A stretch of DNA of 63,645 bases, filler included, from Perkinsus chesapeaki ATCC PRA-425 (Eukaryota > Protista > Perkinsozoa), in the NCBI GenBank assembly GCA_013115145.1. It is 6 parts of 6 records of this genome, joined end to end, with 100 filler letters (N's around TTAATTAATTAA, not from the genome) between each part and the next. Parts side by side here need not be neighbours in the genome. Positions count along the whole stretch, not along the records: positions 1 to 22,491 come from JAAPAO010000579.1; 5 more parts are not named here. The stretch is one strand, 5' to 3'. The notes under the pieces were generated by a model, which worked only from the letters and a program-made list of their open reading frames with translations, ran no database searches and was not told the DNA's origin. Positions within the stretch are counted from its first letter, which is position 1; every line of letters starts with the position of its first letter. The position numbers and the translations under genes were made by a program. This document shows positions 17,001 through 22,591 of the stretch, piece by piece.

Positions 17001-20000
17001 CGCTTGCCAGCAAGCTCGGTCATTGGGTAGGTTGTCCAGGACCCTCGGAAGGTGTGATAGTGTTTGACAGAGCATATTGCTAGAAAGTGTGATTCTGCAA
17101 TCATGATATTCTACAGCGGACGGCTTCAGCGATATTGTAGATTCCGCGAGAATCCTGGTTGCAAGGGTTTGCTAGTCATAACAGTGTTCGACGCTGTTGA
17201 GTGGCGTATCATACTTCTTCCAGCTTCGTGGGTGTGTTCCCTTCAGCAGCACAGGAATCGAAAATGCATTCCTAATGAGAAGGAAACATCGCAACGCATT
17301 CCTTCTGTTAACATTGAAGGTGGCCCTGTGCTGATGCCCTCGCTCAGATGAAGGACATTGTCCAAACGCATAAAGGGCCGGTATTAGAGCAAGCCGTGGG
17401 GATTGGCGCGGCAATGAGGAGAGCCCCTGGTAACCATGCACCGCAGTGGTTTGATGATAATAACAGAGCTTAGGGGAGACAGCATGCGGCATGAGTAGAA
17501 GTGAAAGGTTCTGTAGAGTTGATGGTTGTTGAGTTTCGATATGAGGGGAGGGCACGAAAGAAAGTACGAGCGAATAATAGTGTTGAAGAACCGTGAATAA
17601 GATACTGTATGACATTACTAAGTGTTGAGTACTGCTGAAGTATGTTACGCGAACTGATATACAATCACCGTATGAGTTACTACTGAATACTGTTATTATT
17701 GCAGTAATACATATACAGTAATACTCTCATCAAAGATACTTGGAAAAGAAAAGAAAGGCGTTATTTGATGTTGAAGGCTAGTAGTAGCTCTTGCGAATAA
17801 GACCGGTAAGTTGACAATAAGTTCACACTTAAGTTGGTTACAAGTCTCAGTCGGACATTTCTGCTATGTTCGGTCTCTGACTTGGTTGCGTTGGTAAATT
17901 AAGAGCAATTACGTGTGCAGTTTGTAATGGCAGCCGATGAGTGCCGATCAAGCAGGGGATTGGCGAATCTTCGACGAGGCTGTCCGAGAATAAGCATGCA
18001 AATCGACTCTCCTCCGGCCCCACTAGCGCAAGTTGATAACGTATTGAGTAGGATGAAATCGAGATGCCATAGTAGAGGGCATAGATTGCGGGGCAACCTG
18101 CCGGATAATGCAACTTGGGTGGAAATCTCTAAACTACTGAGGCCGGCGAGCAGGAGACGATCAATGGAAGAGGCAACTCCCTGTGATGGCAGTGGTGACA
18201 CGAGCAAGGTATGCCGAGGATCAGCCGCCTTGAAATCTCCAATATCTAAACTGTGATGTTGGGGTTGTGTTCAGGGAAGTGTTGATGCCCCCCAGCAGAG
18301 GGTTCAAGACAAAGCCTATGGGATCATGTTGGAAGCACGGGATAAAATATCGACACTTGAAGGCGAGACTTCTACTACAGGTGGCAACAGAATCGATTTA
18401 ACGGTCGGAACAGCTGGTGTGTTGACAGGTTCCTCTAGCGGGTTCCGATCAACATACCTTCAAGTAGCGAAGGCCCACCAGGAACTCCTTCATGCCCTGC
18501 ATGGTTCTCGCCCTCGCAGTAGGCCGGCCGGGGTACAAACTGCCGATGAAGAAATGTGCGATAACGAAGTTGGGGAGGGTGGAGAGCTTCTCGATCTCCG
18601 CGATGAGAGAGAAATAATCGCCAACTCGGACGAGCTAGAATCTCCCTTGGCGAATCACAGAGAGGAGCTGAGTCACTGTGGAGAAGTCCAAAAGGCGGAC
18701 TTCATACCAGCAGGGTCGGAGGGTTCTGCCGAGATGAGCGTATTAACCGATACAAACGACCAACGAGCGATTGAGGGCTTCGTGTCCGAGGAGACTGCTG
18801 CCGAGCTCCTCGCAGACGCGATGGCGAGTATCGATAGGAATCCCGAAAGACGAGAAATGCTTCCTGAAACTCGAGTGGAATCAGCTGAAAGGAGGGATAT
18901 GTCAGGCTCGAGCGGCTCGAATGCTATTATCAATGAAGATGGTAAGATTGTCAGTGGAAAGGTCGAGGTTAGAGCAGAATCTTTTCTCAATGTGGTCAGA
19001 GTGGCTTATGAGGGAGGAGTAAGCTCCTGCGCAGTTGGCGAACCAGCCACAGTGCCCATTGACCAAGGTAATTCGCCAGACCAGCCAATCGGTGGCCTGG
19101 AAAGACTGAAGTCGTACGAACTAATGAACGGGCGTGCCATTGAGGCACCGCCCTCGAATGATGCGGAACTTACTATGATCTATAGCGAAGAGGATCTACT
19201 CAAGGGGCGCGCTGACAAGGGAGGAAAACCAGCGATTGATGGGGAAAGTTCGGAAACGGTAGAGTCCAATTCAAATTACTGTCGAGGTCGAACGCGAGAA
19301 GATCTGTGCGAGAGTGCAGAGCTAGTGAGGGTAGAGGGAAAACAGACAGAACGCGTTGGAGAGATAAATGGATGTCAACAAGGTGAACAAGGGTCACAGG
19401 TGCACGCAGAACGGAGGTATACCACAGAGGAAGTGAAGGGGTATGATGTGCTTGTGTGCGAAGCTGCGGTGAAGAACCTCCTTGCTGAGTGCTATGGGCA
19501 CGCTACGACTTCGGATGCTACTGGGGGAAAAGGCGAGAGGATGACTAGTGGTGCAAACTGGACTGGTGCGGGGGAGCGCAGTCTACGAGAGATGAATGAC
19601 GAGCTGAATGAAGATGGAATGAGGAAGGAACTGGGAAAGAGGGTTGCGGGACGGCTGATGGGTGCGGTGCCCAGGAGGAATGCTATAGTGTGCAGCGATG
19701 AGGAGAAAAGGAAGGGACGGGGGAATACTGAAGGCACAGATGTGATGGAAAGGCAGTCAGTTGATGAAGATCGCTTAGTGGGAGAGAATGGTGTTGTCAA
19801 ACAGTCAGGCAGAGCCGATAAAAGCATAGAAATGGGAAGGCCGGGGGAAGTTTATGCAGCTGAAAGCGAGTTACCAACAGTTGAAGAAAAATTACAAACA
19901 GATGAAGGGGAATTACAAACAAATGAAGGGGAATTACAAACAAATGAAGGGGAATTACAAACAAATGAAGGGGAATTACAAACAAATGAAGGGGAATTAC

Positions 20001-20422
20001 AAACAAATGAAGGGGAATTACAAACAGATGAAGGGGAATTACAAACAATTGAGGAATTGCATTCAGTCGATAACGAATTACCCGAAGGCAAGGGTGACGG
20101 TGAACCTACAAGTCAGGGATCTTCTGACAGACCTTCACCAGCACGGAAGGCCAGACTAGTCACACCAGAGTTAGCAATCTTTGACACATTTGCCAGGCTA
20201 GTACGGCAGGCCAAGGCATACCGGAAGCCACGGCAGGAATCGGATGATGGTATCCCTGCAGAGGATGAAAAAGGATGGGGAGACGTCCGAGGGCGAACGG
20301 ATAACTATTTACCGGATATGACGCCGAAGGAACAGAAGACAGTGAAAGTGGCGGTATCCAAGAAGAGGCTTATGAACGCTGATGGCAGGCGGAGGAAGAT
20401 ATTCGATGCTGATCCTTTCTAG
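14100..20422 (+). CDS. Large multi-exon protein with a PX-like segment and a long acidic low-complexity last exon
   Basis: Coding-like exons from about 14.1 kb. The exon at about 16860-17010 reads WQVEYTYDHFVDLSHRLIKVDPSCPPVPSAKH, resembling the PX-domain W-x-V-x-R-x-Y-x-x-F...P-x-x-P-x-K pattern. A 698-codon terminal ORF covers 18326-20422. The start is uncertain and this may be more than one gene. Confidence 0.45.
19890..20048 (+). repeat. Coding tandem repeat, 21-bp unit (AATTACAAACARATGAAGGGG), 7 full copies plus a partial
   Basis: Read directly. Encodes (ELQT[N/D]EG)n in frame within the 18326-20422 ORF. Confidence 0.95.
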
Positions 20423-20730: not shown

Positions 20731-21663
20731 TCACTCTGCCATTTTTTGCTGCACTCGTCGACGGGCAGATCGCCGTTGAGGAGGGTCTGCCGTCTCCTGT
20801 TGAGTTGTAGTGATGACGCATTCCCCAGCCAGGGATGTGATGGCGGCCACGGTGTTAAGCCAATACTTGTTCAGATCGAATCCTCGAGTTGAGTTAAGAA
20901 TATAGTCTGTCGTAACCAACCACGTGTGCATAATAATAAAAATGAGAGATGATATCACCATAACAGCTTGAGTGTCATGCCCGGCTAGAGGCGCCACGTA
21001 ACCGAAAGGCATGAAGAGCAGGAACGCCCAGGTGCCACCGTGGACGATCCAGGACAGTGTGGGCGGCATGGGGGTGGTGACATACATCATAGCATCACCA
21101 GCAGCGGCCCGACAGACTGTCAGATCTTCTTGAACCGACAGGCGGACATGGTCGGGGATTCCCTGGATGGCCGTGAATCGTCTTAGGAAAGCGCAGTAGA
21201 CCGCCGGGACCGTCAGTGGCTGGGGAATCTCGTCAGAGGTCTTCAGTAGGCCCAACTCCTTCAAGGCATCTATACGATCGTCGCCTCGAGATCCAGAAAG
21301 CTCTATAAGATGAATAGCGTAGGCTAGTAGAAGCAGTCTGAATAGGTCTGCCTGGTGAGTGAGGCCCTCTCCAGCCAGTATGACGGTGATGTCGACCGCG
21401 CGACCGGCCGCGTGGGCGGTGTGAGTGCGCATTGACCACCAACGGGAGAAGCTGACCGATGTATAGAAACCAAATAGGAGACCAAGAATGATCGAAAAAA
21501 CGTTCCAGAGCTTTTCCAATGAGGCCAAATGCATGACGACCTCGTTGAAGTGCGGGGCATGGGCCACCAAGGCGAGGGCCACCATGTACGTGAGAGTTGG
21601 AGCGATGAAGACCACCGGTGAGATGTTAGTGGAGGCTGGACGGAAGGGATAGGGTACTGCCAT
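20731..21663 (-). CDS. Bestrophin-family anion channel, intronless
   Basis: Single open frame with several TM helices and LGLLFGFYTSVSFSRWW (bestrophin TM2 signature), plus PMPPTLSWIV. Likely start is MAVPYP at 21663. Confidence 0.75.
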   Translation of the reverse strand: MAVPYPFRPASTNISPVVFIAPTLTYMVALALVAHAPHFNEVVMHLASLEKLWNVFSIILGLLFGFYTSVSFSRWWSMRTHTAHAAGRAVDITVILAGEGLTHQADLFRLLLLAYAIHLIELSGSRGDDRIDALKELGLLKTSDEIPQPLTVPAVYCAFLRRFTAIQGIPDHVRLSVQEDLTVCRAAAGDAMMYVTTPMPPTLSWIVHGGTWAFLLFMPFGYVAPLAGHDTQAVMVISSLIFIIMHTWLVTTDYILNSTRGFDLNKYWLNTVAAITSLAGECVITTTQQETADPPQRRSARRRVQQKMAE

Positions 21664-21955
21664 TGTGAATTTAATGGTTACTATAGAGGAAAGTATCAAG
21701 TGAAGGTGCTTGGTAAAAGTGTGGAAGTATGCAGGAATACCGTCTACCACTCCGGAAGGTTGATCATCTCAATGGCTTACGGATTTACTACTGAGATGGC
21801 AAAGGCCAATTTAGAGAAACTAAGTTGCAGAGGCTAGCTATTTACTAAACAGTAGTTGTTGAAATGTACAAAAAGCGAGTGAAGTGAGTTATAGGCGTCT
21901 GAGACGTACCGAGGGGTAACAACGCAACTCAGTCTTCTGTACAAGTATATCTCTC

Positions 21956-22014
21956 GAGAAACTGTCATCATTTGGCGAGTAAACTTCTTGCCACCAAATA
22001 ATTCATTCGTTCTC
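21956..22014 (-). promoter_or_regulatory. SECIS element (eukaryotic type)
   Basis: Minus-strand RNA GAGAAC-GA-AUGA-AUUAUUUGGUG-GCAAGAAGUUUACU-CGCCAAAUGAU-GA-CA-GUUUCUC: AUGA/GA core, 11-bp helix II, apical AAG and lower helix GAGAA/UUCUC. It lies directly 3' of an in-frame UGA. Confidence 0.75.
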
Positions 22015-22041
22015 TTCTCTTAAATTGCTTCTTCTGTCGGC

Positions 22042-22417
22042 TTATCTTCGTCAGCCCCGGCTCGGCCCCTTCCTCGATGGCCTGTAGGAGGGCAAGTCGC
22101 CACCGCCACCACTGCCGCTATCCCAGAACCCTCGGCTTGCTCGGTTTACAGTGTCACCCTTATGTGGTCGAGGCCTACTGGAAATGACAGGCCTCAGCAG
22201 CTTCCTGAGGTACCTTTGGTCCTCCTCTCTTTGGCGCTCCTTCTCCTTCCATTCGGGACTGGCCTTTACCCGGCTGGCATCGGCTTCGAGGCGATCAAGG
22301 TAGGCCAGGCGCTCCTTTGGAGGTTCATGGTGGACGACATCTGAGATGAAACCGTAAGATACTCCGGTACGAGCTTCACCGACCGCTGCCAGATGGTGAA
22401 GGTGCCGTTGTAGCCAT
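22042..22417 (-). CDS. Selenoprotein S/K-like protein (in-frame UGA = Sec at 22051-22053)
   Basis: Frame reads ...KEKERQREEDQRYLRKLL...RGFWDSGSGGGGDLPSYRPSRKGPSRG-UGA-RR-TAA, resembling the SelS tail (SWRPGRRGPSSGGUG). SECIS downstream. The 5' end is either ATG 22417 with a 43-nt intron (22341-22383) or an exon lost in the N gap, since the frame is open up to 22491. Confidence 0.7.
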
Positions 22418-22428
22418 CTTGGCTCAAG
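22410..22428 (+). other. Spliced-leader relic (19-nt exact match to Perkinsus SL)
   Basis: GTAGCCATCTTGGCTCAAG equals the last 19 of 22 nt of the Perkinsus marinus SL (ACCGTAGCCATCTTGGCTCAAG, recalled from the literature). It is followed by ATTTAG rather than a GT donor, so it is not an SL RNA gene. Confidence 0.7.
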
Positions 22429-22591
22429 ATTTAGTTGCTTCGTTTTCTGAATCTCAACATGCCCTCTCCCATAGAAGACGCTATCCGACAGNNNNNNNNN
22501 NNNNNNNNNNNNNNNNNNNNNNNNNNNNNNNNNNNTTAATTAATTAANNNNNNNNNNNNNNNNNNNNNNNNNNNNNNNNNNNNNNNNNNNN

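What the first reader, a model, noticed from the sequence alone, without database searches (positions are those of the whole stretch)
21956..22417. Hidden selenoprotein gene (SelS/SelK-like) with in-frame UGA and a canonical SECIS, absent from the ORF track
Seen: the minus-strand frame is open from the gap (22491) to a UGA at 22051-22053, then reads Arg-Arg-TAA (22042). The tail GSGGGGDLPSYRPSRKGPSRG-UGA-RR follows a charged helix (KEKERQREEDQRYLRK). About 45 nt further on is a hairpin with an AUGA/GA core, 11-bp helix II, apical AAG and a lower stem. Established: SelS ends ...SWRPGRRGPSSGGUG and SelK ends ...GGUGR, both with Sec 2-3 residues from the C-terminus; eukaryotic Sec decoding needs a 3'UTR SECIS of this geometry. 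Inference: this is a Perkinsus-type selenoprotein of about 110 aa (if ATG 22417 plus a 43-nt intron is used). Standard pipelines would truncate or miss it. No TM helix is visible, unlike animal SelS/K, so it is either a soluble variant or an upstream exon lies in the gap. Caveat: the UGA-to-SECIS spacing is at the short end of what is reported for mammals.
Basis: partly seen in the sequence, partly recalled or inferred. Interest (0 to 1): 0.85.

Follow-up and report, generated by a model that had tools for sequence, protein, structure and literature searches.

The report
Unannotated Perkinsus selenoprotein gene with SECIS
The 3' end of a Perkinsus chesapeaki membrane-protein gene almost certainly reads its UGA "stop" as selenocysteine, guided by a conserved SECIS hairpin 44 nt downstream. 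Public annotation cuts the protein short in all three Perkinsus species that have it.

Summary
The window is a 22,491-nt Perkinsus chesapeaki contig.

- **Coding end.** On the minus strand the last exon ends ...SYRPSRKGPSRG-UGA-CGA-AGA-TAA. In P. marinus and P. olseni the same gene ends ...RG-UGA-CGA-CGC-TAA and ...RG-UGA-CGA-CGG-TAG. So Sec-Arg-Arg-stop is kept through synonymous change, while about 40% of codons differ silently and the spacer after the stop has drifted.
- **SECIS.** 44/43/44 nt after the UGA lies an AUGA...AA...GA hairpin (22015-21955). It has helix I of 7 bp and helix II of 11 bp, 96% pairing across species and 6 pairs changed on both sides. It is the only SECIS-pattern hit in the window, against 0.04 expected.
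- **Annotation.** All three NCBI protein models stop at the UGA.
- **Gene model.** It needs correction. The true 5' exons (signal peptide, 4-Cys luminal domain, TM helix) lie on another contig, so ATG 22417 is probably not the native start.
- **Family.** Membership in SelS or SelK is not shown. Pfam Selenoprotein_S matches only the tail, at E 1-7, and the tail has no partner Cys.

This is best called a Perkinsus-restricted, SelS/SelK-like tail-anchored-style selenoprotein. No RNA or 75Se evidence was available.

The parts
22384..22411 (-). 3' end of the upstream coding exon (…TTAPSPSGS plus the first base of an Asp codon). This is the last stretch shared with the sister contig that carries the signal peptide, Cys-rich domain and TM exons.
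   Evidence: Identical to L002 from 'acaacggcacc' onward. DNA unitigs continue from 22411 into the L002-type exon (loose end GGAAGCCACTGG…).
22341..22383 (-). Intron 1, 43 nt, GT…AG.
   Evidence: Its removal gives …PSPSGS|DVVHHEPP, exactly as in protein P0004 from the sister contig.
22214..22340 (-). Coding exon for the conserved charged cytosolic helix (DVVHHEPPKERLAYLDRLEADASRVKASPEWKEKERQREEDQ-).
   Evidence: Conserved in P. marinus and P. olseni. AlphaFold2 predicts one long helix here, with block pLDDT 83-86.
22175..22213 (-). Intron 2, 39 nt, GT…AG.
   Evidence: The NCBI model P0001 splices it out. P. marinus and P. olseni have unrelated introns of 44 and 50 nt at the same codon phase.
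22054..22174 (-). Last coding exon up to the Gly before Sec: PRPHKGDTVNRASRGFWDSGSGGGGDLPSYRPSRKGPSRG. It is a Gly-rich, basic, disordered tail.
   Evidence: The AF2 model gives no secondary structure here, with block-mean pLDDT 55-62. There is a weak, end-registered Pfam PF06936 match.
22051..22053 (-). In-frame UGA, read as the predicted selenocysteine codon.
   Evidence: TGA stands at the homologous position in all three Perkinsus species.
22042..22050 (-). Arg-Arg codons (CGA AGA) and the true stop, TAA.
   Evidence: The orthologues read CGA CGC TAA and CGA CGG TAG. The second Arg codon differs in each species yet always encodes Arg, and the stop is at the same place.
22016..22041 (-). 3'UTR spacer between the stop and the SECIS. 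Its sequence has diverged but its length is conserved.
   Evidence: 13-17 of 27-28 aligned positions are identical between species. The UGA-to-AUGA gap is 44/43/44 nt.
21955..22015 (-). SECIS element. Helix I pairs 22015-22009 with 21962-21955. AUGA is at 22006-22003. Helix II pairs 22002-21992 with 21977-21967. The unpaired AA is at 21989-21988 and GA at 21966-21965.
   Evidence: RNAalifold consensus structure. 96.3% of cells are paired, against 43-57% when partners are slid, and 6 pairs changed on both sides. It is the only pattern hit in the window. There is a full-length but sub-threshold Rfam SECIS_5 match of 19.2 bits.
22419..22491 (.). Contig-end repeat. This is not part of the native gene; the homologous exon sequence is replaced here.
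   Evidence: Word depth is up to about 9-fold above the 102.5 baseline in X1, with smaller excesses in X4 and X5, and the stretch sits in other sequence contexts. A junction unitig 22382-22448 does exist in DNA reads, so this is a real haplotype junction and not only an assembly artefact.

Best explanation
This is the 3' half of a genuine, Perkinsus-restricted selenoprotein gene.

**The protein (inferred from sequence).** The full protein is about 245 aa in P. marinus, counting Sec-Arg-Arg. It is a single-pass type I membrane protein made of:
- a signal peptide;
- a ~100-aa luminal or extracellular part with four conserved Cys;
- one TM helix;
- a ~100-aa cytosolic part, consisting of one long charged helix and then a Gly-rich, basic, disordered tail ending ...SYRP(S/T)RKGP(S/G)RG-Sec-Arg-Arg.

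**How the UGA is decoded (inferred from the established eukaryotic mechanism).** The ribosome reaches UGA 22053-22051. A form-1-like SECIS in the 3'UTR, whose base is 35 nt and whose AUGA core is 44 nt downstream, recruits the SBP2/eEFSec/Sec-tRNA machinery. Sec is inserted and translation ends three codons later at UAA. When decoding fails, the product ends in -Arg-Gly.

**Likely function (inferred).** Its layout is TM helix, then helix, then a disordered Gly-rich tail with Sec near the end. By that layout the protein most likely works like the SelS/SelK class of ER-membrane selenoproteins, which carry a reactive selenol on a flexible cytosolic tail.

**Shown versus inferred.** Conservation of the UGA, the Arg-Arg-stop extension and the SECIS structure across three species is shown. 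Sec insertion itself, expression, localisation and biochemical role are inferred.
For: 1. **Conserved extension.** Sec-Arg-Arg-stop is conserved in three species with only synonymous or stop-to-stop changes: CGA AGA TAA, CGA CGC TAA and CGA CGG TAG. Meanwhile 31-36 of ~80 codons differ synonymously between species pairs, and the spacer after the stop is only about half identical.
2. **SECIS structure.** The consensus has 18 pairs, 96.3% of cells paired against 43-57% for slid controls, and 6 pairs changed on both sides. AUGA, GGCAAG and GA are invariant.
3. **Published criteria.** The element meets the SECISearch loose-pattern criteria quoted in PMC1802603: NTGA..AA..GA, 13 nt from the quartet to the unpaired AA in all three species, an apical loop within 6-23 nt, and an extra stem below the quartet.
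4. **Chance.** There is one pattern hit in 45 kb scanned, at this site, against 0.04 expected.
5. **Rfam.** SECIS_5 matches full-length and in register on a 101-nt slice, at 19.2 bits and E 0.14.
6. **Spacing.** The UGA-AUGA gap is conserved at 44/43/44 nt.
7. **Haplotypes.** No differences fall in 21950-22119, which covers the CDS end, UGA, spacer and SECIS. Seven fall in the next 85 nt, 21865-21949.
8. **Synteny.** The order SNF2/RING helicase, this gene, bestrophin-like gene is shared by P. marinus and P. chesapeaki.
9. **Sec trait in the genus.** A Sec-containing selenophosphate synthetase prediction is listed for P. marinus in the supplement of PMC4561486.
10. **UGA as a normal stop.** The neighbouring bestrophin-like ORF ends at TGA.
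Against: - No transcript, ribosome-profiling, mass-spectrometry or 75Se evidence exists here. No listed RNA run holds the stretch.
- No Rfam SECIS model reaches its gathering score. There was no hit at all in the whole-window or 792-nt searches, and none for the P. olseni slice.
- Only three closely related species are available, so covariation counts are small.
- The 44-nt UGA-SECIS gap is below the 51-111 nt minimum that I recall for a mammalian reporter (Martin, Harney and Berry 1996; from memory, not retrieved).
- tRNA-Sec, SBP2 and eEFSec of Perkinsus could not be examined with these tools.
- In this window's own haplotype the 5' exons are replaced by a repeat at about 22412-22418, so this particular copy may not make the full membrane protein.
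Confidence: 0.88

Rival explanations
1. UGA is the real stop codon. The conserved hairpin would be some other 3'UTR element, for example a generic kink-turn or regulatory stem, and the Arg-Arg-stop extension would be coincidence.
For: All three public annotations end at the UGA. No Rfam SECIS model passes its threshold. UGA is used as a normal stop nearby. The spacing is shorter than the mammalian minimum I recall.
Against: The six bases after the UGA keep Arg-Arg through three different second codons, and a stop follows at the same position in all three species, while the following spacer is only about 50% identical. The hairpin carries every SECIS signature in register: AUGA, 13 nt to AA, GA, and helix I.
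Confidence: 0.06
2. Sec-independent stop-codon readthrough. The hairpin would stimulate near-cognate decoding of the UGA (Trp, Cys or Arg), giving a three-residue extension without selenium.
For: The extension is very short and the stimulating structure is close to the stop, as in some readthrough contexts. No direct evidence for selenium was obtained here.
Against: The structure is SECIS-shaped, with an AUGA/GA quartet and apical AA 13 nt from the quartet, and does not look like a readthrough pseudoknot or stem directly abutting the stop. P. marinus is listed with a Sec-containing SPS, so the Sec trait exists in the genus. The tail resembles the Sec-bearing tail of SelS.
Confidence: 0.03
3. 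One reading: a short soluble protein starting at ATG 22417, without a TM helix. It would be 97 aa once both introns are removed, and would be made from a haplotype in which a repeat replaced the 5' exons.
For: A DNA unitig bridges 22382-22448 at depth 113, so the junction with the repeat is real. An in-frame TGA lies just upstream of ATG 22417, so the ATG would open the frame.
Against: No transcript evidence exists. Reads of the same samples also continue from 22411 into the TM-containing exon. The orthologue in P. marinus and the sister contig both encode signal peptide, Cys-rich domain and TM. 22419-22491 is a multi-copy repeat at a contig end, where assemblies are least reliable.
Confidence: 0.12

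Closest known systems
Selenoprotein S (SELENOS/VIMP; Pfam PF06936)
   Same: - Single TM helix, then a cytosolic helical segment, then an intrinsically disordered Gly-rich basic tail with Sec next to the C-terminus (SelS described in PMC3628699).
- The tail motif SYRPSRKGPSRG-Sec resembles the SelS tail. PF06936 is the only Pfam family that touches the tail in all three species, and it aligns the last residue before the UGA to profile position 191 of 192.
- The truncated product ends in Gly, as in SelS (PMC12035522).
   Different: - The Pfam match is far below threshold (6.8-9.6 bits against 29.8).
- There is no HMMER or word-search link to any SelS, and no PDB hit to the VIMP helix.
- The tail has no Cys to partner Sec, whereas SelS has Cys174-Sec188.
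- Sec is third from the end (U-R-R), not penultimate.
- There is a cleavable-looking signal peptide plus a ~100-aa 4-Cys luminal domain, not a short N-terminus.
- No RX5AAX2R VCP-binding motif is evident by eye.
Selenoprotein K (SELENOK/SelG)
   Same: It is a small single-pass membrane selenoprotein with a Gly/Pro-rich, basic, Cys-free cytosolic tail, and it is widespread in protists (PMC2375036, PMC1557815).
   Different: No sequence similarity was detected, and there is no Pfam SelK hit at E<=10. The Perkinsus protein is 2.5 times longer, has a long luminal domain, and has a long charged helix that SelK lacks.
Lineage-restricted protist selenoproteins with C-terminal Sec (e.g. SelTryp of Kinetoplastida)
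   Same: They are found only in one protist lineage, carry Sec in a flexible C-terminal peptide, were mis-annotated because the UGA was read as stop, and were identified through a conserved SECIS plus conserved residues beyond the UGA (PMC1557815).
   Different: SelTryp has a CxxU motif and rhodanese/metallo-beta-lactamase domains, with UGA-SECIS distances of 200-1100 nt. Here there is no redox partner Cys, the protein is a membrane protein, and the distance is only 44 nt.

Membership tests
Eukaryotic SECIS element | Conserved (N)UGA on the 5' side and GA on the 3' side of an internal loop (non-Watson-Crick quartet). | tested here: met
   AUGA 22006-22003 and GA 21966-21965 are invariant in three species and flank helix II.
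Eukaryotic SECIS element | Helix II places unpaired AA 10-13 nt after the quartet, the apical loop is 6-23 nt, and there is an additional stem below the quartet (SECISearch criteria, PMC1802603). | tested here: met
   13 nt lie between AUGA and AA in all three species. The loop is 12-14 nt and helix I is 7 bp. 96.3% of cells are paired and 6 pairs changed on both sides.
Eukaryotic SECIS element | Lies in the 3'UTR, on the same strand, downstream of an in-frame UGA whose downstream codons are conserved as coding. | tested here: met
   It lies 44 nt after the UGA, and Arg-Arg-stop is conserved through synonymous changes.
Eukaryotic SECIS element | Scores above the curated threshold of a SECIS covariance model (Rfam SECIS_1 to SECIS_5). 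| tested here: not met
   No hit at gathering score or at E<=10 in 792 nt. On a 101-nt slice SECIS_5 scores 19.2 bits against a gathering score of 50. There is no hit for P. olseni. SECISearch3/Seblastian was not available.
Eukaryotic SECIS element | Supports Sec insertion in vivo or in a reporter. | not testable with these tools
   This needs 75Se labelling or a reporter assay.
Selenoprotein S (PF06936) | Significant match to the family profile. | tested here: not met
   Only the last 21-28 residues match, at E 1-7.4 and 6.8-9.6 bits against a cut-off of 29.8. There is no match for the full-length P. marinus protein.
Selenoprotein S (PF06936) | Cys about 14 residues upstream of a penultimate Sec, forming a selenosulfide (Cys174-Sec188). 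| tested here: not met
   There is no Cys anywhere in the cytosolic part in any of the three species, and Sec is third from the end. The feature is as described in PMC3628699.
Selenoprotein S (PF06936) | Single TM helix followed by a cytosolic helix and a disordered Gly-rich tail. | tested here: met
   The hydropathy peak is at P. marinus residues ~119-141. AF2 predicts a helix at 19-53 of the cytosolic fragment and coil after it.
Selenoprotein K | Detectable sequence similarity to SelK/SelG. | tested here: not met
   No Pfam SelK hit at E<=10. HMMER against 1.84 billion representatives returns only Perkinsus proteins.
Organism with the Sec-decoding trait | The genome encodes Sec machinery (SPS2, tRNA-Sec, SBP2, eEFSec, PSTK, SepSecS). 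| tested here: inconclusive
   The only support is a published Selenoprofiles entry, 'SPS.1.selenocysteine.Perkinsus_marinus', in the supplement of PMC4561486. There is no tRNA in this window. The other factors could not be searched.

The most novel reading that the evidence does not exclude
This would be a previously unrecognised selenoprotein family confined to Perkinsea, not a SelS orthologue. Its SelS-like Sec tail would have been joined to a signal-peptide/4-Cys ectodomain type I membrane protein, or would have converged on that tail. Its SECIS would work at a strictly conserved 43-44 nt from the UGA, closer than the minimum reported for mammalian decoding. That would imply that the Perkinsus Sec-recoding complex can act almost at the ribosome's leading edge. 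The conserved -Arg-Gly end of the failed-decoding product could also serve as a built-in C-end degron, as in human SelS and SEPHS2.
Probability: 0.3. Interest if true: 0.6.

Novelty: new member of a known kind. Interest (0 to 1): 0.45.

Why it matters
**Annotation.** The finding corrects three public gene models, which are currently 'hypothetical' or 'transmembrane' proteins truncated at the UGA. It adds a selenoprotein to Perkinsus, a genus of economically important oyster and clam parasites. I found no published account of its selenoproteome in the searchable library.

**Biology.**
- It gives a natural example of a conserved, very short UGA-to-SECIS distance that could be used to test spacing limits of eukaryotic Sec decoding.
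- It shows a SelS/SelK-style Sec tail on a different membrane-protein chassis, which bears on whether such tails are ancient or arise repeatedly.

The mechanism itself, UGA plus a 3'UTR SECIS, is textbook, so the surprise for a specialist is moderate.

Tried and rejected
- **Rfam.** The gathering threshold on the whole piece gave nothing. At E<=10 on 792 nt the only hit was a spurious RAGATH-33 match. Only a 101-nt slice gave a sub-threshold SECIS_5 hit, and the P. olseni slice gave none.
- **Distant homologues.**
  - HMMER against 1.84 billion representatives found only Perkinsus.
  - Word-indexed searches with the fragment, the tail region and the full-length P. marinus protein found only Perkinsus.
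  - PDB searches by sequence and by profile gave only insignificant coiled-coil noise.
  - ESM Atlas features and structure were uninformative: generic single-pass proteins, pTM 0.18.
- **Metagenomes.** A protein-pattern scan gave no relatives. A DNA pattern joining UGA, CGAAUGA and GCAAG gave 5 hits, all chance matches in unrelated, mostly GC-rich DNA.
- **RNA evidence.** No listed RNA run holds the stretch, and the RNA run that was laid (X6) gave no contigs.
- **Papers.** The SelK/SelS family paper (PMC3234841) and the Plasmodium selenoproteome paper (PMC1342035) are not held. A search for a citable statement on minimal UGA-SECIS spacing found none.
- **Other weak Pfam hits.** SARAF (E 0.001-0.006) and Unstab_antitox (E 0.002-0.02) are below their cut-offs. 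I judged them compositional, reflecting a TM helix plus a charged helix.
- **VCP-interacting motif.** I rejected this by eye: there is no RX5AAX2R in the helix.

Full report
**1. What is there**

The piece is a complete 22,491-nt contig of Perkinsus chesapeaki. The word-indexed protein search returned 'hypothetical protein FOL47_008761, partial [Perkinsus chesapeaki]' from a contig of exactly that length.

On the minus strand the frame is open from the contig edge to TGA 22053-22051, followed by CGA AGA TAA. ATGA is at 22006-22003. RNAfold draws a 12-bp helix, a 12-nt loop beginning C-AAG, a GA opposite the AUGA, and a lower stem.

**2. More than chance**

I wrote a simple SECIS descriptor. 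It requires ATGA, a 9-13 bp helix with at most one mismatch, AA within the first four loop bases, a loop of 8-26 nt, GA directly after the 3' arm, and a lower helix of at least 5 bp. It hits once in both strands of the window, at ATGA 22006(-). A hundred dinucleotide-preserving shuffles gave a mean of 0.04 hits.

**3. Orthologues**

The same gene exists in P. marinus (P0003, 243 aa; locus L001) and P. olseni (P0002; locus L003). Its 5' half in P. chesapeaki lies at the end of another contig (P0004; locus L002). Gene order is shared between P. marinus and P. chesapeaki: SNF2/RING helicase, this gene, then a bestrophin-like gene. All annotated proteins end ...RG, that is, at the UGA.

The DNA after the UGA reads as follows:

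| Species | Codons from the UGA |
|---|---|
| P. chesapeaki | TGA CGA AGA TAA |
| P. marinus | TGA CGA CGC TAA |
| P. olseni | TGA CGA CGG TAG |

The second Arg codon is different in each species, yet it is always Arg, and a stop follows at the same position.

Divergence elsewhere is high. Between species pairs, 31-36 of about 80 aligned codons differ only synonymously and 6-14 differ non-synonymously. The 25-26 nt after the stop are only 13-17/27-28 identical. This is the pattern expected if translation continues through the UGA.

**4. The hairpin is a SECIS by structure and by covariation**

RNAalifold on the three sequences gives helix I (7 bp), an internal loop carrying AUGA on the 5' side and GA on the 3' side, helix II (11 bp) and a 14-nt apical loop starting GC-AAG.

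Counting that structure gives these results:
- 96.3% of cells form standard pairs, against 43-57% when the 3' partners are slid by 1-3 columns.
- 6 of 18 pairs have changes on both sides.
- The covariation score is reached by only 1 of 500 shuffles.

The distance from the quartet to the unpaired AA is 13 nt in all three species. Together with the loop length and the lower stem, this satisfies the SECISearch loose pattern quoted in PMC1802603.

Rfam is the weak point:
- Nothing reaches gathering score, and nothing at E<=10 in 792 nt.
- On a 101-nt slice there is a full-length, in-register SECIS_5 match of 19.2 bits against a gathering score of 50, with E 0.14.
- There is nothing for P. olseni.

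I treat this as a failed formal test of the Rfam models. It is not evidence against the structure, because every hand-checkable SECIS feature is met.

**5. Spacing**

The gap between UGA and AUGA is 44, 43 and 44 nt in the three species, although the intervening sequence has diverged. The base of helix I is 35 nt from the UGA.

From my own knowledge, about 12-15 nt downstream of the A site are inside the ribosome. On that basis the hairpin can stay folded while the ribosome sits on the UGA, and even on the stop 9 nt further on. This is an inference.

The gap is shorter than the 51-111 nt minimum I recall from mammalian reporter work (Martin, Harney and Berry 1996). That figure is from memory; I could not retrieve a citable statement.

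**6. Population hint**

DNA unitigs from public runs show a second haplotype of this region. It has no differences in 21950-22119, which covers the CDS end, UGA, spacer and SECIS, but 7 differences in the next 85 nt, 21865-21949. This is consistent with constraint ending where the SECIS ends.

**7. Gene model**

It is confirmed by P0004, which reads ...PSPSGS|DVVHHEPP. The NCBI model P0001 used a 39-nt variant and the wrong upstream frame.
- **Intron 2** (22213-22175, 39 nt) is in frame and free of stops, so it looks like ORF. P. marinus and P. olseni have unrelated 44- and 50-nt introns at the same phase.
- **Upstream exons.** P0003 and P0004 encode a hydrophobic N-terminus, four conserved Cys and one TM helix, at about residues 119-141 in P. 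marinus.
- **The contig end.** In this window, homology to that exon stops at about 22412-22418. 22419-22491 is a repeat: its word depth is up to about 9-fold higher and it occurs in other contexts. Reads in three runs continue from 22411 into the TM exon. A bridging unitig 22382-22448 shows that the repeat junction also exists in DNA.

ATG 22417 is therefore probably not the native start. Whether this haplotype makes a short soluble form is open.

**8. The protein**

AlphaFold2 on the cytosolic part (three-sequence alignment, mean pLDDT 66) gives one long helix, PPKERLAYLDRLEADA...RREE, with block pLDDT 83-86. A roughly 40-residue coil follows, carrying the Gly-rich basic tail. Lys and Arg directly after the TM helix fit a C-terminus-in-cytosol topology. 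That last point is inference.

The arrangement of TM, helix, then a disordered Gly-rich tail with Sec near the end is the arrangement described for SelS in PMC3628699.

**9. Is it SelS or SelK?**

Membership is not demonstrated.
- Pfam Selenoprotein_S is the only family that touches the tail in all three species, and it aligns end to end (profile positions 165/171 to 191 of 192). But it scores 6.8-9.6 bits against a cut-off of 29.8.
- HMMER against 1.84 billion representatives, and three word-indexed searches, find only Perkinsus proteins.
- PDB searches do not find VIMP.
- The defining Cys partner of SelS (Cys174-Sec188) is absent.
- Sec is third from the end, as in SelK, but nothing else resembles SelK.
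- The signal peptide plus 4-Cys luminal domain has no counterpart in either family.

I therefore file it as 'works like the SelS/SelK class' and leave membership unproven. It could equally be a lineage-restricted family, as SelTryp is for kinetoplastids (PMC1557815).

**10. Sec trait in the genus**

The window has no tRNA, and I could not search Perkinsus genomes for the machinery. [quoted passage not shown] That is a Selenoprofiles prediction of a Sec-containing selenophosphate synthetase, which is a marker of Sec use.

UGA is an ordinary stop for the neighbouring bestrophin-like ORF, so a general UGA reassignment is not the explanation.

**11. A side inference**

The product of failed decoding would end -Arg-Gly in all three species. 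In human cells, Gly-end and specifically -RG ends are C-end degrons, used to clear truncated SelS, SelK and SEPHS2 (PMC12035522). Whether Perkinsus has such a pathway is unknown.

**12. Verdict**

This is a real, conserved selenoprotein gene that is mis-annotated in public records (confidence about 0.88).
- The 110-aa soluble model is not.
- SelS/SelK homology remains a resemblance.

I found no paper in the searchable library describing Perkinsus selenoproteins. Selenoprofiles-type surveys have included P. marinus, however, so prior unpublished recognition cannot be excluded.

The mechanism is textbook. The protein family and the short conserved spacing are the modestly new parts.

Noticed in passing
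window 22419-22491 (contig end): This stretch is a multi-copy repeat. Word depth in run X1 is 930 against a baseline of about 100-160, and it joins to at least two other sequence contexts. The gene's TM-containing exon is replaced by it in this haplotype, while other reads continue into the intact exon. The cause could be a transposon or microhomology junction in one haplotype of a polyploid genome, or an assembly-graph break.
   Followed up: partly
window 22303-22365: A third, more diverged copy of the gene is present at lower depth: a 1400-nt unitig at depth 47 in X1. It has a CGG insertion after 22334 and a different intron-1 region. It may be a paralogue or a distant haplotype.
   Followed up: no
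window 19823-20073 (+), inside ORF 18326-20422: There is a 21-nt tandem repeat, about 12 units of 7 codons each, inside a 698-aa ORF that has no significant Pfam domain. The region has strong purine and GC skew (GC skew 0.25 at 18-20 kb).
   Followed up: no
window 20731-21750 (-): A bestrophin-like channel gene (Pfam Bestrophin_2, E 2e-11) lies immediately downstream of the selenoprotein gene, only about 200 nt after the SECIS. The same order is seen in P. marinus. This implies a very short 3'UTR and intergenic region.
   Followed up: partly
window 22340-22491 (-), NCBI model FOL47_008761: The public partial protein model reads the wrong frame at its 5' end. It uses a 39-nt intron where the 43-nt one is correct, so its first 33 residues are translated from repeat or intron sequence.
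   Followed up: yes
L001 3998-4105; L003 394-500: The P. marinus and P. olseni orthologues carry the same UGA-Arg-Arg-stop and SECIS, and are likewise annotated as ending at the UGA. The P. olseni copy sits on a 515-nt contig, so its 5' part is missing from that assembly.
   Followed up: yes
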